DNA of 63,506 nucleotides, the filler included, from Octopus bimaculoides (lineage: Eukaryota), in the NCBI RefSeq assembly GCF_001194135.2. It is 5 parts of 5 records of this genome, joined end to end, with 100 filler letters (N's around TTAATTAATTAA, not from the genome) between each part and the next. Parts side by side here need not be neighbours in the genome. Positions count along the whole stretch, not along the records: positions 51,725 to 62,335 come from NC_068982.1; 4 more parts are not named here. One strand, 5' to 3'. How positions within the stretch are numbered: the stretch's first letter is position 1; each line of letters begins with the position of its first letter. Both the position numbers and the translations under genes were made by a program. Below the pieces are notes generated by a model. That model was given only the letters and a program-made list of their open reading frames with translations. It ran no database searches and was not told the origin of the DNA. This document shows, one piece after another, positions 51,681 through 62,379 of this stretch.

Positions 51681-51902
51681 NNNNNNNNNNNNNNNNNNNN
51701 NNNNNNNNNNNNNNNNNNNNNNNNTCATTTATATATAGCCAGAACCTGAAGACCTTAAGGAAAAACTACGAAAGAGAGAGAGAGGATGGAGGGGTGAGAC
51801 AGAGGCATGGCGGGAGAAAAGATCATCATCATCATCATATATATATATAAAGAGAGAGAGAGAGGGGGGACCAGTCAAGCAGCACATCACGCTGTAATTC
51901 TT

Positions 51903-51937
<35 letters not shown>

Positions 51938-51995
51938 TAATAACAACATTGAAGAATACCTTAGGAATGAGAACCCAGGTTTGAAATTTCCCCAA

Positions 51996-52038
51996 GACAC
52001 CTGAAGAAGGCTGGAGGGTATATCAGCCGAAACGTGTT
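51996..52038 (+). ncRNA. hammerhead-ribozyme-like motif (probably inactive) in a short Penelope-type repeat
   Basis: GACAC-CTGAAGA-A-GGCTG(GAGGGTATAT)CAGCC-GAA-AC-GT-GTT: perfect 5-bp stem II, but the cleavage nucleotide and stem I junction are defective. Confidence 0.45.
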
Positions 52039-52466
52039 AACAACAAACAAGATGAGGACAAATATCCGTCGAATGTAAATAACGAAAATAATGTACATAA
52101 TTCCTCATCTCTTAAATATAGAGCTGTAGAATATTTTGTACGATAAACAGTGTAGCATCCAACATATATTTTATGTTGAACTTTGTAGGAATTGGTTCAT
52201 GCTGTACAGTAAAATGTGTTCAGTTAATGTGCTCTCTTCTTACCATCACTGTTGTATCTCTTGAAGCACTGTAAAATGGAAAACCCTCTCCAAACTGCAA
52301 CTTCAAAATTATCAATGCCTATGAGTCTTCCATAGAAATATTGTCCAACCTTTACAGATGCACAAGTTGCACATCAACTGTGTTGACTATAGAAATGTTT
52401 AAGGTTGCCAAATGTTTATGGGTATCAAACTTACTATTAATATTATTCTATTATCTTTATTTACAG

Positions 52467-52538
52467 AGGCAATGCAAGAAATAGCTGAAGAGCCAGATAG
52501 TGAAGAAGAATCGCAGGCAAAAGATGAAACAGAGTCAG
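52467..52538 (+). CDS. acidic-repeat gene, exon (72 nt, phase 1-1)
   Basis: TTTATTTACAG / AG GCA ATG...AMQEIAEEPDSEEESQAKDETES / GTATAT; symmetric phase; intron flanks homologous to those of 56074. Confidence 0.72.
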
Positions 52539-52877
52539 GTATATTTTGTTATATTCATCTGGAATGTATAAAGTTCTCAAATAATTTAGTAAAATTTATA
52601 TATTCATATTTAAATCTTAGGATATTTTTACACATTAGAAAATTTATCTTGTTTTCAATGCGATTACTATACCTGAGAAGGTATAGTAAGCCTAAATATG
52701 AAAACAAGTATATACTATGATATATAACAAGCCCTACTAGTACATGAACCATCATTTTACAAACAATAAATAACTTTCTGTTTTGATGAAACATAGTGAT
52801 ATAATTCAACAAAAAGTAAATAAATGAAAATAACAAAAATTGGAAACATTTGTTTTATAAATGAAAATAGATATTAC

Positions 52878-52937
52878 TTTTTACCTTTATCTTTTACTTG
52901 TTTCAGTCAATAGACTGCGACCATGCTGGAGCACCAC
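52878..52937 (-). mobile_element. SINE 3' tail fragment
   Basis: TTTTACTTGTTTCAGTCAATAGACTGCGACCATGCTGGAGCACC. Confidence 0.75.
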
Positions 52938-52959
52938 AATATTATAAACGTACTTAAAA

Positions 52960-53176
52960 GGCAGTAAGCTGGCAGAATCATTAGCACACCGGATGAAATG
53001 TTAAGCAATATTTCATTTGTCTACACATTCTGAGTTCAAATTCTGCTAAGCTTGACTTTGCCTTTCATCCTTCTAGGGTTGATAAAATAAGTATCAGTTG
53101 AGCACTGGGATCGATGTAATCAACATACCTCTCCTCCAAAATTATCGATCTTGTGCCAAAATTTGAAACCAATATT
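52960..53176 (+). mobile_element. full-length SINE (family A) with 19-bp flanking direct repeat
   Basis: A-box-like TGGCAGAATCATTAG, B-box-like GAGTTCAAATTC; flanks CAATATTATAAACGTACTT (52937) and CAATATTATAAACATACTT (53170). Confidence 0.9.
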
Positions 53177-53547
53177 ATAAACATACTTCTGAGCCCAACT
53201 ACTATATAAAAAGAATAAGTTCTTCACCTCCATGGATATATTATTAAACTATGTGACTCTTATATGCAGTGTTGTATCAATCCTAAGATGGCCCTGGTTG
53301 TGACATATGGTGTGGCTCAGGCATCTAATTCTGGTGGAACCCATATTTTTCCAGGGCTGAGTATAGCCAATTTCTTCCAGAGAGATAGGGCTGAAGGGAG
53401 AGAGAGAAGAAGAAGAATTGACTGGTAATTCATTTATCAATACCAAAGAGTTGGAGGGTAAAATTTACCTATGTATATTTACCCCAATAATATATTCAGG
53501 ATTTGAGGAGCTGGATGACCAAGCTGTCCATTATATATCACTAATAT

Positions 53548-53665
53548 CATTTTGATGTCCACTTTTCCATGCTCGTATGCATCTGATGAAATTCATTTGG
53601 ATAGATATTTTTTAACCAGAATTTGTTGAGGCAGATTTTCTATGACTGTATGTTCTTCCTGTTGT
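53548..53665 (-). mobile_element. RTE-type tail fragment
   Basis: Reverse complement ACAGGAAGAACATACAGTCATAGAAAA...GCATGGAAAAGTGGACATCAAAATGAT resembles the tail of 53828-54581. Confidence 0.6.
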
Positions 53666-53827
53666 CAATTTTCAACCATGATTGGACATATTTTTATGGG
53701 AGACTGGAAACAAATAACACCACACCACTTGACACTCATTTACAACCATTACTTGATATCACAACAATGAGACACAAGCACTCATACACCTTTATATACA
53801 TACATACAAATGTAAGTAATTAATATC

Positions 53828-54581
53828 TAGATGAACATTAGGCCTCACTGAGGCAATGACTAGTGACCAAGACCTTTGGAAATATGCTGTGCGTAAAAAG
53901 ACCTGGCAAGCCAAGTGAGACCATAACCCGTGGCCTTTGCTAGGGGTGTAGCCAGCCCACTTATGCGTACCTTTCCTTCATTGGACACTAAAACTCTGCT
54001 TGCGATGACCTGTTGAGACAAGTGAAATCAAAATCAAAATCAAACCAAACTTGACGACTGACACCCATGCCAACCTTTCTTTCATTGGGCACTAAAACCT
54101 GTTGGGGCAAGTGAAATCGAAATTGAAGCAAATTCGATGACTGGCACCTGTGCCAGTGGAGTGCTAACAGCACCATCTGAGCGGGATCATTGCCGGAGCA
54201 GCTGTCTGGCTCCCGTGCCGGTGGCACGTGAAACACACCATTTGAGCATGAAGTTACCTAAGTTGCCTTACTGGCACTTGTGCCTGTTGCACGAAAAGCC
54301 ATTTGAGCAAGGTCATTGCCAGTGCCGCTGAACTGGATCCTGTGTAGGTGGCTCATAAAAAACACCATTTAAGTGTAGCCGTTACCAGTACTGCCTGACT
54401 GGCCCCCATGCCGGAGGCACGTAAAAGCACCCACTACACTCTTGGTGTGGTTGGTGTTAGGAAGGGCATCCAGCTGTAGAAACTCAGCCAGATCAGATTG
54501 GAGCCTGGTGCAGCCATCTGGTTCGCCAGTCCTCAGTCAAATCGTCCAACCTATGCTAGCATGGAAAGCGGACGTTTAAAC
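53828..54581 (+). mobile_element. RTE-clade LINE 3' end (last codons + 3' UTR) followed by (GAT)n tail
   Basis: LGLTEAMTSDQDLWKYAVRKKTWQAK* (53838-53918) fits the RTE C-terminal DRxxWR pattern. The UTR ends AGGAAGGGCATCCAGCTGTAGAAA...GCATGGAAAGCGGACGTTTAAAC(GAT)n. Confidence 0.75.
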
Positions 54582-54637
54582 GATGATGATGATGATGATG
54601 ATGATGATGGTGATGGTGATGGTGATGATGATGATGG

Positions 54638-54673
<36 letters not shown>

Positions 54674-54881
54674 GTTTCACGATAGGGTGCTGAAAAGTTC
54701 CTGGTTTTGGGTACAAAAAAATACNNNNNNNNNNNNNNNNNNNNNNNNNNNNNNNNNNNNNNNNNNNNNNNNNNNNNNNNNNNNNNNNNNNNNNNNNNNN
54801 NNNNNNNNNNNNNNNNNNNNNNNNNNNNNNNNNNNNNNNNNNNNNNNNNNNNNNNNNNNNNNNNNNNNNNNNNNNNNNNNN

Positions 54882-54962
<81 letters not shown>
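54582..54962. repeat. (GAT)n microsatellite blocks flanking a gap
   Basis: 54582-54672 and 54882-54962. Confidence 0.95.
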
Positions 54963-54964
<2 letters not shown>

Positions 54965-54970
54965 AAGTTT

Positions 54971-55152
54971 CACGATAGGGTGCTGAAAAGTTCCTGGTTT
55001 TGGGTACAAAAAAATACAGGAGGATCAGTTAATTATGATTTTATCCACACACTTTTTGCAGCTGTCCTTCAGTTTTTCTTAGCCCTGTAAAAGAACTTGG
55101 AAGGTTGGGCTTCCAACTAGGCCTTTCACAACACTCTTAAAGCCAGGGACTT
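54971..55152. mobile_element. mariner-type MITE
   Basis: Left end CACGATAGGGTGCTGAAAAGTTCCTGGTTTT and right end TTAAAGCCAGGGACTT are partly inverted; the left end resembles the TIR at 50642. Confidence 0.6.
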
Positions 55153-56073
55153 GTACTGTTATTAATGTTGTCATTTTAGAAACTTAGATATTGGTATCTA
55201 ATTTAGACCTGCACTGACTAGCTTTCTTAACACTTTTCATTTTCTCTTATACTTCTTGAAATATCATTATCCTGTAGCATACAAACTGCAGTTTTATAAT
55301 ATTTTGAACTGGGGCTTGTATATCACTATTTATAATAACTAATACACCATAACAACAAATACTATAAAATGACAGCTCATATACAAGTAGGATCTGTTAT
55401 ATATGGTATAATCTATAGATTACAGTTGGTAAATGTATAAACAACACTTCTACATATTTTAAATACAATTAGTATATATTTGTTGTCTTCTCTGGAACTA
55501 ATTACAAGTTAAGGGTCTTGTCTTGCAAGTTACTTCATAACATCACTAGTGCTGGTGTCAGGTAAAAAGCACTCTGTGTATGCCCTGTAAAAATTAAGTG
55601 TTGTGTGGTGCCGATTTTGAGAATTAGTGCAAATTTGCTGAACAGTGAATAAAATAGTATGTGTTATGTGGTATACAGTGGGGAAACTTGAGACATAGTG
55701 TGTGTTGTAGAGCGTAGTATTGGGACATATGTAGAGTACATTGTTGCATTAAACATTGTTTATGTTGTACATTGTAGTAGTTATGATATATATTGGAGCA
55801 GTAGATACATATTGTATTTGCTTTACTGTAAAAATGACCCAGCTAATGTATGCTCTCTCACCATTACAATTGAATCTCTTCAGATACCATAAAATGGACG
55901 ATCAAATGCTACCAACCATACCTGAAACTCTAAAAATTTCAATGACTTTGCATGTTTCTTTGACAAATATTTCAAGTTATACATCAGCTGTATTGACCAA
56001 AGAAATGTGTATAGTTGAATGGTTATAAGTATTGACTCAACTGGTAATATTATTGTATTATGTCTATTAATAG

Positions 56074-56136
56074 GTGCTGCACCACAAATATCAGAAAGTC
56101 CATCTGGTGAAGAAGAAATAGATAAAGAAGAGATAG
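56074..56136 (+). CDS. acidic-repeat gene, exon (63 nt, phase 1-1)
   Basis: TCTATTAATAG / GT GCT GCA...AAPQISESPSGEEEIDKEEI / GTATAT. Confidence 0.72.
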
Positions 56137-56602
56137 GTATATTTTGTGTTATACTGAATTGAAATGTATAAAATTGTAATATAATTTAGTAAAATTCACA
56201 ATTAAATTGCAGAATATTTTTGCCTTTCAGAAAATTCCATGATCAATCATGAAATGTTCTGTCATTTCTTTGTTTACTCTTAGAAGCATTTAGTCCAAAC
56301 ATCTAGTTAGAAGTTGTCATCTTTTCAATGCACTACCACCTTCTACTTTTCCTTAAAATGTCAAGAACTAGAAGGAAACACTGTGGACGATTTTTGCTCT
56401 TTTTCTCCTATATCTGAGGAGTTTGTTCCACTCTAGATTTCACTCATCATTTCTTATTCATGTGCAAACCACACATTCTAGTCCTTTCTGTGACACAAAG
56501 CTTTCAACCTCTATCTGTAACCCAGTTCAGCTGTTCAGGCTATTCTAACTTCCCCCTGAAAGATGATGTCTATGTTTACATAAATTTCACTCTCTGTCAC
56601 TT

Positions 56603-56893
56603 ACTTGTTGGTGCCATGTAGAAAGCACCCAGTCCACTTTGTAAAGTGGCTGGTGTTAGGAAGGTCATCAACTCATAAAAAACATGCCAAAACTGACCTT
56701 GCTACCAGTGCTGGTGCTATAGAAAAAGTACCCAGTCCACTTAGTAAAGTGGTTGGCATTAGGAAGAGCATCCAGCCATAAAACCCATGCTAAAACAGAC
56801 GGTAGAGCCTGGTGCGCTCCTCTGGCTTACCAGCTCCTATCAGACTGTCCAACCCATGCCAGCATGGAAAACACATTAAATGATGATGACGAT
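56603..56893 (+). mobile_element. short RTE-tail element with internal tandem duplication
   Basis: GTGC(C/T)AT(G/A)(T/G)A(G/A)AAAG(C/T)ACCCAGTCCACTT...AGGAAG occurs twice; ends GCATGGAAAACACATTAAATGATGATGAC. Confidence 0.72.
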
Positions 56894-57979
56894 ATTTAAT
56901 AAAATATTTCCATCTCTATTTAAATTGCAGAACATATGTAAAAAGTTCCTGTTTAAGCATGTTTGTTTTGTAAGTTGATTATATCCCATGATTTATAGCA
57001 TTTTAGTTTGATGAGTGTGTGGACTACAGGGCAACATTCAGAGTGTCTAAATTGAGGGTATGTTGTGTGTAGTACTCACATACTGCATAGTGAGTTGTAT
57101 TGAAGTAACAATAACAAATGTATAGTGGTCATAATCATGTCATATTGTGTGATATGCCATTTGTAAATAAAGACGTGTGTGATACACTGTCTGGAAATAA
57201 GGACGTACTGTGGGTTGTATGGTATGGAAAAAAACCCAATGGTATTTGAGATATAGTATGGAGATTAAGGGATGTGTTGCCCTCCATCTTTTTGGCATGA
57301 ATAAAATACCTGCCCAGGGTAGTATATTGGCAGACTTTTTAGAGCATTAGACAGAATATTAGGCATGTGTCTGTTCAAGCTCTGTGTATCCTGATTTCAT
57401 ATCTCACCTCCCGTCACTGTCAAAAACAAAAAAAAACCCCCAAAAACAGTGATACTTCATCAGCAACTATGACCAACTGATACCATCAAGAATCAAGAAT
57501 ACTAATGGGATTAGCATGCCCAAATCTCTACACTACACTACACACATTATCACAGAGCAATGATGTATGCTAGATGGTTAACAGTGTGCAAATTATGACA
57601 CATGGTGTGGGAATCAGTATTTAGTTTAGGGAGACAATTGACTCCTTGAAAGGAAACAATCATTGCTAATTACCCAGTATGGGGACATTTAGTGGTATGA
57701 AGAGTAGAGATTAGGACATATTGGATGCTGTATATTGTGGATATGTGGACATGTTGGGTGCAGATTAGGACAGTTAGGGTAGTGTGTAAGGTTGCATTAA
57801 TAATATGCTTTGTGTTGTATAAACCCCCTACAAAAGAACCTCAAATCCTTCATTACCCCGACATGTAACCATTCAAAATTCCATTCCTGTGCATTTTCCC
57901 TACAAATATTGAGCAAGAGATTTTTAAATGGCACAACAACAGTATTACACCAGAACAATCTGCATATTATATATTGCAG

Positions 57980-58027
57980 TGCCATCTATTGGAGAAAAAA
58001 AGAAAACAAAAGGCAAATTAAAGAAAG
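57980..58027 (+). CDS. acidic-repeat gene, candidate basic micro-exon (48 nt, phase 1-1)
   Basis: ATATTGCAG / TG CCA TCT...PSIGEKKKTKGKLKK / GTATGG; the downstream intron is homologous to those of the sister units. Confidence 0.5.
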
Positions 58028-58497
58028 GTATGGTTTACAAAATGTTCTACTGGAAAATTTTATCATTCTTTTTGTTATATTTATTTATCAATATTTAAAT
58101 TTTGGAATAGTTTTACATTTTAGCAGAAACCATGGTTGATGTTTTCATTTTTATGGTTACTTAATCCTGTTAGGAAATGTTTGGAAGGTAGAATTTCCAA
58201 GTTGTTGATAGTATAATATTCAAGAAGTATCATCATATAGGGGATGCTGTGTGTGGTACATATAGAAGTGAGTCTGATGAGTTAGATAGTCAGAACATAT
58301 TATAGTTAGTGTTGTGTGTTGCAGTTTGAACATGTATGGAATGTAGTTCAGAGTTAAGTGTATGTTATCAGTGTCAGTCTGAACATGATGTATAGCATGT
58401 TTAGATTAGAAGTGAAAGTTTACATTGGATGTAGTGAGATTGATAGAAAATATTTCATGGATTTGGATAGTTAGCCAATTATATTCTATTTCTTAAG

Positions 58498-58578
58498 TTC
58501 CTGTGACAAAAGACAAAGTTGCTGCTGCACCTGCTGAAGGAGAAGAGGGAAAGGAAAAAGAAATGGCAAATGAAGAGG
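58498..58578 (+). CDS. acidic-repeat gene, exon (81 nt, phase 1-1)
   Basis: CTATTTCTTAAG / TT CCT GTG...PVTKDKVAAAPAEGEEGKEKEMANEE / GTTTAT. Confidence 0.75.
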
Positions 58579-59165
58579 GTTTATTTAATAGGACATATAT
58601 TTTACTGTAAAGCATCATAAAAAATCTTTAAACATCAGAAAAGGAAACAAAAGAAATATTAGAAGTAGATATGCTTTGTGCAATATTCTACACGAAATTA
58701 TAATTCTTTTCGCAACATTTATGCATATTTAAATTTTAGAATATTCTCGAGCCTGTGTTTAATCCTGTTTTCATATTTATAAATACAATATTTTGTTAGA
58801 AAATGTTTGGAAGGTAGAGTTTCACAGAGTGTTGATTATGTATAAACTACAGCATAATATTCAAGATGTATCATACAGGGCAGAGTAGAGATGAGGACAT
58901 GGTGTATTTGAGATATACAGAAGTTAGAATATTGTATGTGATATAATAAGAACATATATTTTAAGTACATGGTGTGTTGCAGTGTAAACTTAATGTTAGG
59001 TGAAGTGAGTATAGTATAGAGTTGAGTTCAAGTTATCTGTGTTAGAACATGTTGTATGAGGCTTGGTTTATTGGGAGTGAAAGTTTGTTGTGTTGGGCAC
59101 AGTGGGTTTGACAGAAATTATTTCGTCCATTTGAATATTTTGTCCATTATCCTCTATTTCTTAAG

Positions 59166-59336
59166 TTTCTGTGGAGAAAGACAAAATGGCTGCTGCACCT
59201 GCTAAACAAAGAGAAAGAGAAGATGAAGAAGAAGATGAAGAAGAAGAAGATGTAGAAGGAGAAAAAGGAAAGAAAGAAGGAGAAAAAGGAAAGAAAGAAG
59301 GAGAGGAAAAAGAAATGGTAGCGGGCGATAAAAAAG
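59166..59336 (+). CDS. acidic-repeat gene, exon (171 nt, phase 1-1)
   Basis: CTATTTCTTAAG / TT TCT GTG...SVEKDKMAAAPAKQREREDEEEDEEEEDVEGEKGKKEGEKGKKEGEEKEMVAGDKK / GTATGA; paralogous to 58498. Confidence 0.8.
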
Positions 59337-59785
59337 GTATGATATATATATAGTCTATTGTAAAGCATCATAAAATATCTTTAAACAACAGAAATCAGCC
59401 AGCTCTATGTTGTTTTCTTATCTGTGTTGATTATACAGCATGGAATGGAATTATTGATGTAGTGAAGATACAGATGTAGAATTATCACTAAAGCTCTTGA
59501 CATCCATTGCATATAAAGTCAATGATATGTGATAGATATTGATGCAAACAAGTTTGGTACAACTTTTTATAGTTAAAGATGAACACAGCTTTGAAAGAAT
59601 TGTTATGTAGCCCTCATTGAGAAGGACTTATATGTTAAATGGTGCAAATTCTCTGAGTATCATCCCAACTGTTAATATTATTCTATTCTATAAATTGAAT
59701 ATGGCAGAGCAGCTTAGTTGAGAAGAAAAACTAAGAAAAATACATCAGAGACAGTTATGTTTTTTTAATTCCTTTAGTATATTTA

Positions 59786-60343
59786 TTACCTCTGCCAAGC
59801 AAGGATGTTATGTTTTCATCGACATTGTCCATCTGCCCGTCTTTGTGCAAAATAACTCAAAAAGTTGTAAACGGTATTTAATGAAACTTGCAGGAAAAGT
59901 TGGTAATGAGACGAGGAACAGATGATGAAATTTTGGTAGTGATCTAAGAATTTTTATGGATTCTTGAAGGATTTTTCATTTGTTATATTTACTTTACATG
60001 AAGTATTAGTGTTACGTTCTTTGATCATCTCCCTTGAAGACATGTTCATTGTTTCCACATAACCTATGGTGGCATTGCTGTTTCCAAAGTTTTTTTTTTT
60101 TCTCTATGAGTATGTGGAGCTTGCTGTTGTCATTGATGTATTATAACTGGTTCAGATGATTCCTGTTTTTAAAGGGTTTTTTAAAAAAAATCATATGGCT
60201 GTGTCATTTTTTTTACCCCGCCAAGGAGGTTGTGTTTTTGCTGGCGCTGGTTTGAGAAATTGGGCGATTTTCAGCATGCGTGTATATGGGTGGAAATGAG
60301 CTGCTTGGCGGAGGTCTTCACTCTCCGAGTGCTTTTCTAGTTT
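59786..60343 (+). mobile_element. non-autonomous Helentron/HINE-like rolling-circle element
   Basis: Subterminal IR ACCTCTGCCAAGC (59788) / GCTTGGCGGAGGT (60303), 3' stem-loop CACTC-TCC-GAGTG, terminal CTAGT, T-rich flanks. Confidence 0.72.
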
Positions 60344-60800
60344 AAATTTTGAAGTGTTTTAACATGTTAGAATAATCCATGGTTGATTTTATATCCTTTT
60401 TATAGTTATAATAACCACTCAGAAAAAGTTAAAATAGTAGCTTCATAGTTTGTAGATAATGTGTGTACTACAGAATAATATTCAAGATGAATCTGTAGGG
60501 TATTATAGTGATGAGGGAAGATTGTACATGGCATGTATAGAAATCAGGTGTAGTGTATGAAACAAAACATGTTATTTTTGGTGTTCTGTAGAATTTAGGA
60601 TATGCTGTCGGTTGCAGTGTAAACATGGTGTCAGGTGCAATGAGTATAATGCAGAATTAAGTGCATGTTGCCTGCATTAATTAGAATATATTGTATGAAA
60701 CTTAGTTTAGATTGGAAGCGAAAGCTTGATGCAATGAGTTTGACAGAAAATATTACACCCATTTGGATGTCTAGCCCATTATATTCTATTTCATAAATAG

Positions 60801-60897
60801 AAGAAAGATAAAATTGATGTACCTACTGAAAGAGAAGGACAAAAAAGGAGAGAGTGAAAGAGAGGAAAAAGAAATGGTGGTGTGTGTTAAAAAAACT
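60801..60897 (+). pseudogene. decayed paralogue of the 58498/59166 exons
   Basis: KDKIDVPTEREG then, after an extra A, GESEREEKEMVVCVKK. Acceptor phase is not compatible with phase 1, and there is an in-frame TGA. Confidence 0.6.
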
Positions 60898-60920
60898 GTG
60901 TTTAATATGGTATATATTCT

Positions 60921-61872
60921 GGTGGAATATCAGAGTTAGGAAGCACCAAGAAGTTGGAATTTCTCTCTATTGATGGAGATTTTTCTTTTTTTTTTTCTTT
61001 TTTTTTTGTTTCATGGTGCCCTTGGAAATGATCTGGAACATCCTTTTTACAGAAAAAGAAGTTTTTNNNNNNNNNNNNNNNNNNNNNNNNNNNNNNNNNN
61101 NNNNNNNNNNNNNNNNNNNNNNNNNNNNNNNNNNNNNNNNNNNNNNNNNNNNNNNNNNNNNNNNNNNNNNNNNNNNNNNNNNNNNNNNNNNNNNNNNNNN
61201 NNNNNNNNNNNNNNNNNNNNNNNNNNNNNNNNNNNNNNNNNNNNNNNNNNNNNNNNNNNNNNNNNNNNNNNNNNNNNNNNNNNNNNNNNNNNNNNNNNNN
61301 NNNNNNNNNNNNNNNNNNNNNNNNNNNNNNNNNNNNNNNNNNNNNNNNNNNNNNNNNNNNNNNNNNNNNNNNNNNNNNNNNNNNNNNNNNNNNNNNNNNN
61401 NNNNNNNNNNNNNNNNNNNNNNNNNNNNNNNNNNNNNNNNNNNNNNNNNNNNNNNNNNNNNNNNNNNNNNNNNNNNNNNNNNNNNNNNNNNNNNNNNNNN
61501 NNNNNNNNNNNNNNNNNNNNNNNNNNNNNNNNNNNNNNNNNNNNNNNNNNNNNNNNNNNNNNNNNNNNNNNAAATGTTCATTAAATCCCACACCTTTTCA
61601 TCTGGAAATATGTACTTGTTTCTTACCAAAAAGGCTTCTATTGTTTTTAAATGTGTAAGTCTCAAAGAAATCTTCATGTTAAGTGCTCACAAAGTTAACC
61701 AAAATTGGTCCGGAGAGTAGAGGATGGGGTGGGTAGGGGTGACAAAAAATCCAATTTTTTGAGAATTTTTTTTCTGAAAATGATGCCCCAGATCATTTTC
61801 AAGGGCACTGTGAAAAAAAAAATCTGAAAAATCCCCATCAAAATGGAGAAATTCCTAACTCTGACATCCGCC
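60921..61872. mobile_element. long-TIR fold-back DNA transposon derivative with 8-bp TSD (Merlin-like)
   Basis: GGTGGAATATCAGAGTTAGGAA... and ...TTCCTAACTCTGACATCCGCC are inverted over about 140 bp; flanks TATATTCT / TATAATCT; the middle is mostly gap. Confidence 0.7.
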
Positions 61873-62379
61873 TATAATCTACTGTTAAGCATCATAAAAA
61901 CATCTTTAGACTTCATAAATCACAGTTTCCTGATGTTTTCGTGTCCATGTTGACTACTCAGCTGAGGGTAGAATTATTGTAGAATCATCAGCAGAGTTCT
62001 TGACATTCAATGCATATAACTGAAGTCATTGATATGTGATAGATATTGATGCAAAGAAGTTTGGTACAACTTTTTATAACTATGAGCAAGCACTGCTTTA
62101 ATAAAATTATTTAATCTTCATTGATATATGTTAAGTGGTGCATATTCTCTGAGTATCATTCCAACTGTTAATATCATTCTATTCTGTATATTAAATAGGG
62201 CAGTATTGGCTAATGGAGAAACAAAAGAACCATTAGAGATGTCTTTTGTTTCCTTTAGTAATATTTATTCATCTTTATTTAACTCTTTATCTTTCAGATT
62301 CTGCTGTCAAATGATACACTTATTTATTCACATTANNNNNNNNNNNNNNNNNNNNNNNNNNNNNNNNNNNNNNNNNNNN

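What the first reader, a model, noticed from the sequence alone, without database searches (positions are those of the whole stretch)
52467..59336. Gene built from tandemly amplified, symmetric phase-1 micro-exons encoding a charged low-complexity polypeptide
Seen: five AG..GT-bounded segments of 72, 63, 48, 81 and 171 nt, all phase 1-1 and all open, which splice to ...AMQEIAEEPDSEEESQAKDETES-G-AAPQISESPSGEEEIDKEEI-V-PSIGEKKKTKGKLKK-V-PVTKDKVAAAPAEGEEGKEKEMANEE-V-SVEKDKMAAAPAKQREREDEEED... The introns are homologous to each other: the 52539 and 56137 starts share GTATATTTTG..TTATA..GAAT/AATGTATAAA..TAATTTAGTAAAATT, and about 250 nt upstream of 58498, 59166 and 60801 align. Established: small symmetric exons can be added or skipped without frameshift, as in titin PEVK or triadin-like regions. 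Inference: a lineage-specific exon-cassette array that could tune length and charge of a disordered domain by duplication and alternative splicing. I cannot name the protein.
Basis: partly seen in the sequence, partly recalled or inferred. Interest (0 to 1): 0.78.

Follow-up and report, generated by a model that had tools for sequence, protein, structure and literature searches.

The report
Duplicated charged small-exon array, unproven
A stretch of apparently octopus-like DNA holds nine tandemly duplicated copies of small exon-like segments, five of which are still spliceable and in frame and would encode a charged, floppy protein segment; this is a familiar way for disordered proteins to grow, and nothing here shows that the segments are actually expressed.

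Summary
The five AG..GT-bounded segments exist as described: 72, 63, 48, 81 and 171 nt, and only the phase 1-1 frame is open. The intron homology is real and wider than reported. The locus is a decayed tandem array of a three-exon module: A (acidic/Ser), K (basic) and B (KDK-AAAPA plus E/K). It has nine copies. Five carry no defect. Four (58611-58668, 59703-59754, 60801-60897, 62199-62238) each carry 2-4 defects among lost AG, lost GT, length not 3n, and stop codons. That all-or-nothing split, the 3n-only indels (9 and 90 nt) and stop counts of 7/12/0 per frame favour real coding exons. Against this, paralogous exons are no better conserved than their introns. Generic splice-site scores are unexceptional: both B exons use AAG acceptors and exon 4 has a GTTTAT donor. 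Chance AG..GT open segments are common on both strands. The spliced peptide matches nothing among 5.8 billion proteins, in an exhaustive HMMER search or in Pfam. The 54725-54881 gap lies deep in intron 1 between near-identical contig ends and touches no reading frame. Verdict: observation confirmed, interpretation partly supported (about 0.5). If real, it is a new member of a known kind (symmetric-exon arrays encoding disorder). Modest interest.

The parts
52467..52538 (+). Best splice sites of the set (ttatttacag| and CAG|gtatat).
   Evidence: (acceptor 9.1, donor 5.3)
52130..52644 (+). Duplication unit A1: exon A1 with about 340 nt of upstream and 105 nt of downstream intron. Homologous to unit A2.
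   Evidence: 63.5% over 526 nt, E 5e-45
54725..54881 (.). Assembly gap inside intron 1, flanked by 96%-identical 136-nt contig ends (54589-54724 and 54882-55017). Probably a spurious gap; no coding consequence.
   Evidence: (D1)
55752..56236 (+). Duplication unit A2 (exon plus flanking intron).
56074..56136 (+). Paralogue of A1 with a net 9-nt (3n) length difference.
57980..58027 (+). The exon and its downstream intron are distantly homologous to the 3' half of the A exons and their downstream intron.
   Evidence: (52486-52638 ~ 57975-58123, 65%)
58498..58578 (+). Weak sites: AAG acceptor and GTTTAT donor.
   Evidence: (acceptor 1.4, donor -1.1)
58611..58668 (+). K2-psi: decayed copy of the K exon. 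No AG, donor GT changed to AT, length not 3n.
   Evidence: (57998-58583 ~ 58639-59254)
59166..59336 (+). Paralogue of B1, lengthened by 90 nt (3n) of GAA-type internal repeats with periods 15 and 21.
   Evidence: (acceptor 4.3, donor 6.8)
59703..59754 (+). A3-psi: decayed copy of the A exon. AG lost, GT changed to TT, in-frame stop, length not 3n.
   Evidence: (D2, D14)
60801..60897 (+). 97 nt, 5-nt and 3-nt deletions, three stops in the phase-1 frame.
62199..62238 (+). A4-psi: decayed copy of the A exon. Donor lost, stop in frame. Part of a 2.5-kb duplication, 59349-59787 ~ 61873-62269.
   Evidence: (71.5% over 446 nt)

Best explanation
The piece is part of a + strand gene in an AT-rich genome with long introns. 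From memory, the interspersed repeats look octopod. Within that gene, a genomic module of three small symmetric exons was copied head-to-tail several times, introns included. The three exon types are A (acidic, Ser/Glu-rich), K (Lys-rich) and B (KDK-x-AAAPA followed by E/K-rich sequence). Unequal crossing-over is the inferred copying mechanism.

The present order is A1, A2, K1, B1, K2-psi, B2, A3-psi, (K3 replaced by an insertion), B3-psi, A4-psi. Five copies are still splice-competent and in frame. Each would add 16-57 residues of polyampholyte, disordered chain. Exon B2 was further lengthened by in-frame slippage of 15- and 21-nt purine repeats. The other four copies have decayed into pseudo-exons.

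Every retained exon is phase 1-1, so any subset could be included without a frameshift. The purine-rich (GAA-type) exon bodies are the classical kind of exonic splicing enhancer, which would help the weak AAG acceptors and the GTTTAT donor to be used.

Shown: the duplication architecture, the frames, and the intact-versus-decayed dichotomy. Inferred: transcription, splicing at these junctions, translation, disorder, and any alternative splicing.
For:: nine homologous copies split into five with zero defects (AG, GT, length 3n, phase-1 frame open) and four with 2-4 defects each. No copy has exactly one defect, which is the bimodal pattern expected if a subset is kept by selection.

stops per frame are 7, 12 and 0. 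P is about 6e-5 that all five are open in the required frame given their composition. Under neutral substitution alone at d=0.13, all five would stay intact with P about 9e-4. Codon position 1 is 59% G and 5% T.

net length differences between intact paralogous exons are 3n (9, 90 and 24 nt), whereas all four decayed copies have a length with mod 3 = 1.

the five exons and B3-psi are among the most purine-rich 48-nt windows of the piece, all on the same strand.

the units include hundreds of nt of intron. SINE and MITE insertions interrupt the array, so it is old, local and not itself a mobile element.

PMC3632108: genes of mostly disordered proteins tend to be built of symmetric exons (calpastatin and MAP2 are 1-1) that often arise by internal tandem duplication.

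PMC6469411: short repetitive low-complexity exons (titin PEVK) are routinely missed by standard annotation, which softens the negative database result.
Against:: no protein among 5.8 billion (90% clusters) or 1.84 billion representatives (exhaustive phmmer) matches any part of the spliced peptide, even at E<=10 for exons 1-4. So no annotated proteome in those collections contains these exons or recognisable orthologues.

no Pfam family.

paralogous exons are 72-82% identical and their flanking introns 73-76% (84% just after the A donors), so there is no excess nucleotide constraint on the exons. All seven B1/B2 differences in the first 13 codons fall in four codons that change the amino acid.

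a generic PWM finds 69 (+) and 94 (-) chance candidates with comparable or better scores. Both B exons use the rare AAG acceptor. Exon 4 scores 1.4 / -1.1. All five donors have T at +4.

Purine-rich tracts avoid stop codons by composition alone. The five exons descend from about three ancestral exons, so their shared phase amounts to 2-3 independent observations, not five.
Confidence: 0.5

Rival explanations
1. A non-coding tandem segmental duplication in an intron or intergenic region. A 0.5-2.5 kb unit containing purine-rich low-complexity tracts was amplified. Five of the tracts happen to keep AG, GT and an open frame, because GA-rich sequence rarely makes stop codons and because AG/GT were inherited with about 75% per-site identity. 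Nothing is spliced or translated.
For:: exon-like parts evolve at the same rate as the rest of the unit. AG..GT open segments of equal or better splice score are common on both strands, and several of the five sites are weak (AAG acceptors, GTTTAT donor); no protein or family match anywhere; treating the nine copies as independent, with about 0.27 probability each of staying intact, five or more intact is only marginally unlikely (my binomial estimate is about 0.07).
Against:: defects are all-or-nothing (0,0,0,0,0 versus 3,4,2,3) instead of a continuum; every intact copy has a 3n length and indels between intact copies are 3n, including a 90-nt expansion; 0 stops in the phase-1 frame against 7 and 12 in the others. 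All features are on one strand in one phase.
Confidence: 0.33
2. The units are copies of a dispersed transposable element or satellite family that happens to carry a purine-rich core, so the 'exons' are repeat-family sequence found at many loci.
For: The piece is rich in interspersed repeats: SINE-like copies at about 53830-54724 and 56590-56893, and TIR elements at 59788-60315 and 60913-61881. Genome-wide copy number of the A/K/B units could not be tested.
Against:: the units lie head-to-tail on one strand in a repeating A-K-B order. No terminal repeats, poly-A tails or target-site duplications were seen at unit borders. The units are themselves interrupted by recognisable mobile elements; the conserved B-exon core has no match in the metagenome contig collection, whereas the SINE tail does; the B core occurs only at the two B exons in the window.
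Confidence: 0.07
3. Only some of the five are real exons (for example A1, A2, K1 and perhaps B2), or they are exons of a non-coding or UTR transcript. In that case the open frame is incidental and B1 is a pseudo-exon or a rarely used cassette.
For:: A1, K1 and B2 have acceptable combined site scores, while B1 is below threshold and A2 is marginal (3.0/2.7). Phase 1-1 symmetry means that skipping B1 costs nothing.
Against:: B1 keeps frame, 3n length, AG and GT just like the others, unlike its decayed sister B3-psi; the frame statistics argue for coding rather than UTR.
Confidence: 0.1

Closest known systems
Symmetric (1-1) exon arrays encoding intrinsically disordered regions that arose by internal tandem duplication, e.g. 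calpastatin and MAP2 (Schad et al. 2013, PMC3632108)
   Same: All exons are phase 1-1 with 3n length. The product is charged and low-complexity. The exons are paralogous through duplication of exon-plus-intron segments.
   Different: No sequence similarity to calpastatin, MAP2 or any other protein. Expression is unproven. Nearly half of the copies are dead.
Titin PEVK exon array (PMC6469411)
   Same: Short repetitive exons rich in E, K, P, A and V. Expansion by tandem duplication of exon blocks, with mobile elements in the introns. Poorly captured by automated annotation.
   Different: No PPAK or poly-E repeat homology, no flanking Ig or Fn3 exons in the piece, only five usable exons as against more than 100, and different exon lengths.
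Triadin-type KEKE luminal regions
   Same: Many small exons encoding alternating Lys/Glu stretches.
   Different: No detectable homology in the database searches. No transmembrane or other anchoring exon is visible in the piece.
Schistosoma micro-exon genes, MEGs (bioRxiv 10.1101/2023.06.21.545858)
   Same: Genes composed of short symmetric exons separated by long introns. Variation is produced by exon skipping.
   Different: MEG exons are 3-81 bp and encode small secreted proteins of flatworms. Here the exons are 48-171 nt, no signal-peptide exon is visible, and there is no homology.

Membership tests
Symmetric-exon tandem array encoding a disordered region (calpastatin/MAP2/PEVK kind) | Consecutive exons of the same symmetric phase with lengths that are multiples of 3 | tested here: met
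   72, 63, 48, 81 and 171 nt, all open in phase 1-1.
Symmetric-exon tandem array encoding a disordered region (calpastatin/MAP2/PEVK kind) | Exons are paralogous by duplication of genomic segments that include flanking intron | tested here: met
   A1~A2 over 526 nt; K1+B1 ~ K2psi+B2 over 638 nt; B units ~ B3psi over about 520 nt; a 2.5-kb repeat 59349-59787 ~ 61873-62269.
Symmetric-exon tandem array encoding a disordered region (calpastatin/MAP2/PEVK kind) | The segments are transcribed and spliced at the predicted junctions | not testable with these tools
   No transcript data for this organism are reachable. Indirectly negative: no protein in the collections contains the peptide.
Symmetric-exon tandem array encoding a disordered region (calpastatin/MAP2/PEVK kind) | Selective maintenance of frame and splice sites | tested here: inconclusive
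   For: the bimodal defect pattern and the frame statistics. Against: exon identity equals intron identity and the splice-site scores are weak or ordinary.
Titin PEVK / triadin / calpastatin / MAP2 as protein families | Detectable sequence homology to the family | tested here: not met
   zero hits; only a meaningless Pfam match (E 2.9).
Schistosoma-type micro-exon gene (MEG) | Most internal exons very short (3-81 bp) and symmetric, in a gene for a small secreted protein | tested here: not met
   Exons are symmetric but 48-171 nt. No signal-peptide exon lies in the piece. No homology.
Dispersed transposable element or satellite family | Many copies at unrelated loci | not testable with these tools
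   The source genome is not searchable. The only proxy is that the B-exon core has 0 hits in metagenome contigs, while the SINE tail has 4.
Dispersed transposable element or satellite family | Mobile-element hallmarks at unit borders (TIR, LTR, poly-A, TSD) | tested here: inconclusive
   Searches show TIRs only for the inserted elements (59788-60315 and 60913-61881), none bounding the A/K/B units. No dedicated TE library was available.

The most novel reading that the evidence does not exclude
A lineage-restricted (orphan) coding region that grew out of purine-rich repeat DNA. On this reading, a cephalopod-specific gene segment with no homologue in any annotated proteome is still undergoing birth and death of symmetric exon cassettes. 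The five live cassettes would be combined by alternative splicing to set the length and net charge of a polyampholyte linker.
Probability: 0.12. Interest if true: 0.55.

Novelty: new member of a known kind. Interest (0 to 1): 0.3.

Why it matters
If the five segments are real exons, the locus catches exon birth and death in the act. Live and dead copies of the same three-exon module sit side by side, and in-frame repeat slippage has enlarged one exon. It would also mark a gene segment missing from current annotations. The principle itself is already established: symmetric 1-1 exons, internal tandem duplication and a disordered charged product. The value would therefore be as an example and an annotation fix, not a new mechanism. 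If the segments are not expressed, the locus is an ordinary intronic or intergenic segmental repeat.

Tried and rejected
1. Naming the protein. Exhaustive phmmer over 1.84 billion representatives gave none. Pfam gave nothing meaningful.

2. Finding other assemblies of the locus through exact ORF products: not on record.

3. Finding the B-exon core in metagenome contigs: 0 hits. A SINE-tail pattern hit 4 contigs, but only about 50 nt of the tail matched, which is uninformative for the finding and for the taxon.

4. Rfam and tRNA scans of the piece: only sub-threshold snoRNA noise on the microsatellites, and no tRNA.

5. Splice-site PWM ranking as proof of exons. Rejected as evidence, because chance candidates score as well on both strands. 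The high-scoring minus-strand candidates (for example 55922-56103) exist because the purine-rich exons supply polypyrimidine tracts on the other strand, and they translate to junk.

6. An alternative conserved donor at GAAATG|GT inside the B exons. Rejected because it gives a 152-nt exon and breaks the phase.

7. Reading B3-psi as a sixth exon. Rejected: 97 nt with three stops in phase 1. It is open in one other frame, but that frame is incompatible with exon 5's donor phase.

8. Long ORFs or TE proteins in the piece: none.

The third protein-index search was left unused. Searches already covered every exon, and a further query had little chance of changing the answer.
Full report
**What is there.** The usable piece (51725-62335) is AT-rich (about 33% G+C). 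It has no ORF longer than about 110 codons apart from those running through N. It is full of interspersed repeats. From my own memory, not tested, the SINE-like elements with (ATG)n/(GAT)n tails look like those of octopod genomes.

| Exon | Coordinates | Length |
|---|---|---|
| 1 | 52467-52538 | 72 nt |
| 2 | 56074-56136 | 63 nt |
| 3 | 57980-58027 | 48 nt |
| 4 | 58498-58578 | 81 nt |
| 5 | 59166-59336 | 171 nt |

Each follows an AG and precedes a GT. Each is open in frame +2, that is phase 1-1. Joined, they give exactly the quoted 144-residue peptide.

**The assembly gap.** The gap at 54725-54881 was tested first.
- It lies inside the putative intron 1, 2186 nt after exon 1 and 1192 nt before exon 2, within a SINE tail and its microsatellite.
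- The 136 nt to the left (54589-54724) and to the right (54882-55017) are 96% identical.
- They share an exact non-microsatellite 50-mer that ends precisely at the gap edge.
- The simplest reading is two contig ends that overlap but were not merged because the microsatellite differs. The gap is then probably spurious, and intron 1 would be about 3.24 kb rather than 3.54 kb.
- No reading frame crosses it. The overlap supports the scaffold join between exons 1 and 2, unless the 50-mer is itself repeat-family sequence.
- A second gap (61067-61571) lies inside an inserted element with terminal inverted repeats, outside the five exons.

**The duplication architecture is larger than reported.** Self-comparison shows three exon types.
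- *Type A:* exons 1 and 2. Their units 52130-52644 and 55752-56236 align over 526 nt.
- *Type K:* exon 3. It and its downstream intron are distantly related to the 3' half of A and its downstream intron (52486-52638 ~ 57975-58123).
- *Type B:* exons 4 and 5. The block exon 3 + intron + exon 4 (57998-58583) aligns as a whole with 58639-59254.

There are four further, decayed copies:
- K2-psi (58611-58668), between exons 4 and 5.
- A3-psi (59703-59754).
- A4-psi (62199-62238).

A 2.5-kb repeat (59349-59787 ~ 61873-62269, 71.5%) links the last two modules. The order along the strand is A1, A2, K1, B1, K2-psi, B2, A3-psi, [insertion], B3-psi, [insertion], A4-psi. This is a repeating A-K-B module. 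SINE-like, MITE-like and TIR elements interrupt the array, so the array is local and older than those insertions.

**Evidence that the five are exons.** This is intrinsic and moderate.
1. The nine copies fall into two classes. Five have AG, GT, 3n length and an open phase-1 frame. Four have 2-4 of these features broken. No copy has a single defect.
2. Length differences between intact paralogues are 3n (A1/A2 9 nt, B1/B2 90 nt, A/K 24 nt). All four dead copies have a length with mod 3 = 1 by homology-defined borders.
3. Across the five there are 0 stops in the phase-1 frame, against 7 and 12 in the other two frames. Composition-preserving shuffles give 6e-5 for all five being open in the one required frame. 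A substitution-only neutral-decay simulation gives 9e-4 for all five remaining intact at 13% change per lineage.
4. The exons are the purine-richest spots of the strand. Codon position 1 is 59% G and 5% T.
5. The design matches a documented rule. [quoted passage not shown]

**Evidence against.**
1. No protein anywhere matches. It also found nothing, even at E<=10, with the less repetitive first 102 residues (only 86 candidates). Exhaustive phmmer over 1.84 billion representatives gave zero hits. Pfam gave nothing. An exact 23-27-residue exon match should have surfaced, so none of exons 1-4 is part of any protein held there. Either the source genome's annotation omits them or they are not coding. 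Annotation tools do miss short repetitive exons, as shown for titin PEVK (PMC6469411), which weakens this argument but does not remove it.
2. Paralogous exons are no more similar than their introns: 72-82% against 73-76%, and 84% just after the A donors. The seven differences in the first 13 codons of B1/B2 all fall in four codons that change the amino acid. So there is no sign of purifying selection on sequence, only on frame and borders.
3. Splice sites are ordinary. With a generic PWM the piece yields 69 chance AG..GT open candidates on the + strand and 94 on the - strand. Some of these score higher than any of the five. Both B exons use an AAG acceptor, exon 4 has a GTTTAT donor (scores 1.4 and -1.1), and all five donors carry T at +4.
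4. GA-rich sequence avoids stops by composition. The five exons descend from about three ancestors, so the shared phase is 2-3 independent observations.

**Weighing.**

| Reading | Confidence |
|---|---|
| Real in-frame exon array of an unannotated or poorly annotated gene | about 0.5 |
| Non-coding tandem segmental duplication whose purine tracts are open by chance and descent | about 0.33 |
| Only some are real exons, or they are non-coding exons | about 0.10 |
| Dispersed repeat family | about 0.07 |

**How it would work (inferred).** Unequal crossing-over between the homologous intron flanks adds or removes whole A-K-B modules. Slippage of 15- and 21-nt purine repeats lengthens an exon in frame. 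Every unit is 1-1, so each gain, loss or skip changes only the length and charge of a disordered polyampholyte:
- A copies contribute acidic Ser-Glu clusters of the S-x-x-E type.
- K contributes a Lys cluster.
- B contributes KDK-AAAPA plus E/K runs.

The purine-rich exon bodies are of the kind known to act as splicing enhancers (established knowledge, not tested here). They would compensate for the weak sites. Copies that lose selection decay quickly, as the 3' half of the array shows.

**Comparison with known systems.** It works like the symmetric-exon arrays of calpastatin, MAP2, titin PEVK or triadin. It is not a member of any of those protein families, since homology was tested and not met. 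It is not a Schistosoma-type micro-exon gene, because the exons are too long, no secretory exon is visible and there is no homology (10.1101/2023.06.21.545858).

**Novelty and interest.** If real, this is a new member of a known kind. Interest is about 0.3. It is a tidy, partly decayed example of a known mode of protein growth, with unproven expression.

Noticed in passing
window 54589-54724 and 54882-55017: The two sides of the 157-N gap are 96% identical over 136 nt, including an exact 50-mer that abuts the gap. This looks like an unmerged contig overlap caused by (GAT)n/(ATG)n length or sequence variation.
   Followed up: yes
window ~53830-54724 and 56590-56893: Two same-strand copies of a SINE-like element end in CCAACC(C/T)ATGC(C/T)AGCATGGAAA...(GAT)n (54395-54593 ~ 56693-56893, 71%). 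Each has internal subrepeats (54140-54299 ~ 54270-54428; 56606-56697 ~ 56709-56800, 79%). The roughly 50-nt tail alone recurs in four metagenome contigs (L001-L004).
   Followed up: partly
window 60913-61881 (contains the 505-N gap 61067-61571): An inserted element about 0.97 kb long with long imperfect terminal inverted repeats (60949-61057 versus 61767-61862, 79-82%). It sits directly after the decayed B3 copy and splits the 2.5-kb repeat.
   Followed up: partly
window 59788-60315: A MITE-like insertion bounded by a 14-nt inverted repeat, ACCTCTGCCAAGCA / TGCTTGGCGGAGGT (93%). It occupies the place where a third K-type copy would be expected.
   Followed up: partly
window 55650-55799, 57675-57824, 58175-58499, 58800-59124, 60425-60599: C-depleted, G+T-rich blocks on the + strand (C 6-7% against a 15% mean; GC skew +0.4 to +0.6) lie within about 420 nt upstream of exons 2-5 and of B3-psi. 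They are part of the duplicated units. Whether they are GU-rich splicing-regulatory sequence or just inherited composition is unknown.
   Followed up: partly
window 52608-52628, 56201-56221, 56918-56938, 58094-58114, 58731-58751, 60341-60361: A shared motif, ATTTAAATT(NN)AGAATATTTT, lies about 65 nt downstream of the donors of exons 1, 2 and 3 and about 150 nt after exon 4. It also occurs at two places with no live exon nearby (56918, just after a SINE; 60341, just after the MITE). These may mark further lost copies of the module.
   Followed up: partly
window 52925-53170: Another interspersed-repeat-like stretch, GCTGGCAGAATCATTAGCAC...TTCAAATTCTGC...GGTTGATAAAATAAGTATCAGTTGAGCACTGGGATCGATGTAATC. 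From memory it resembles a tRNA-related cephalopod SINE. ARAGORN calls no tRNA here.
   Followed up: no
window 51776-51943: A cluster of simple repeats at the 5' edge of the piece: (GA)n, (ATC)n, (AT)n and (AAT)12.
   Followed up: no
window 55922-56103 (- strand) and 57857-57985 (- strand): The best generic splice-site candidates in the piece are on the minus strand, opposite exons 2 and 3. The purine-rich exons supply polypyrimidine tracts there, and the translations look like noise. This is a caution for any PWM-based exon call in this region.
   Followed up: yes
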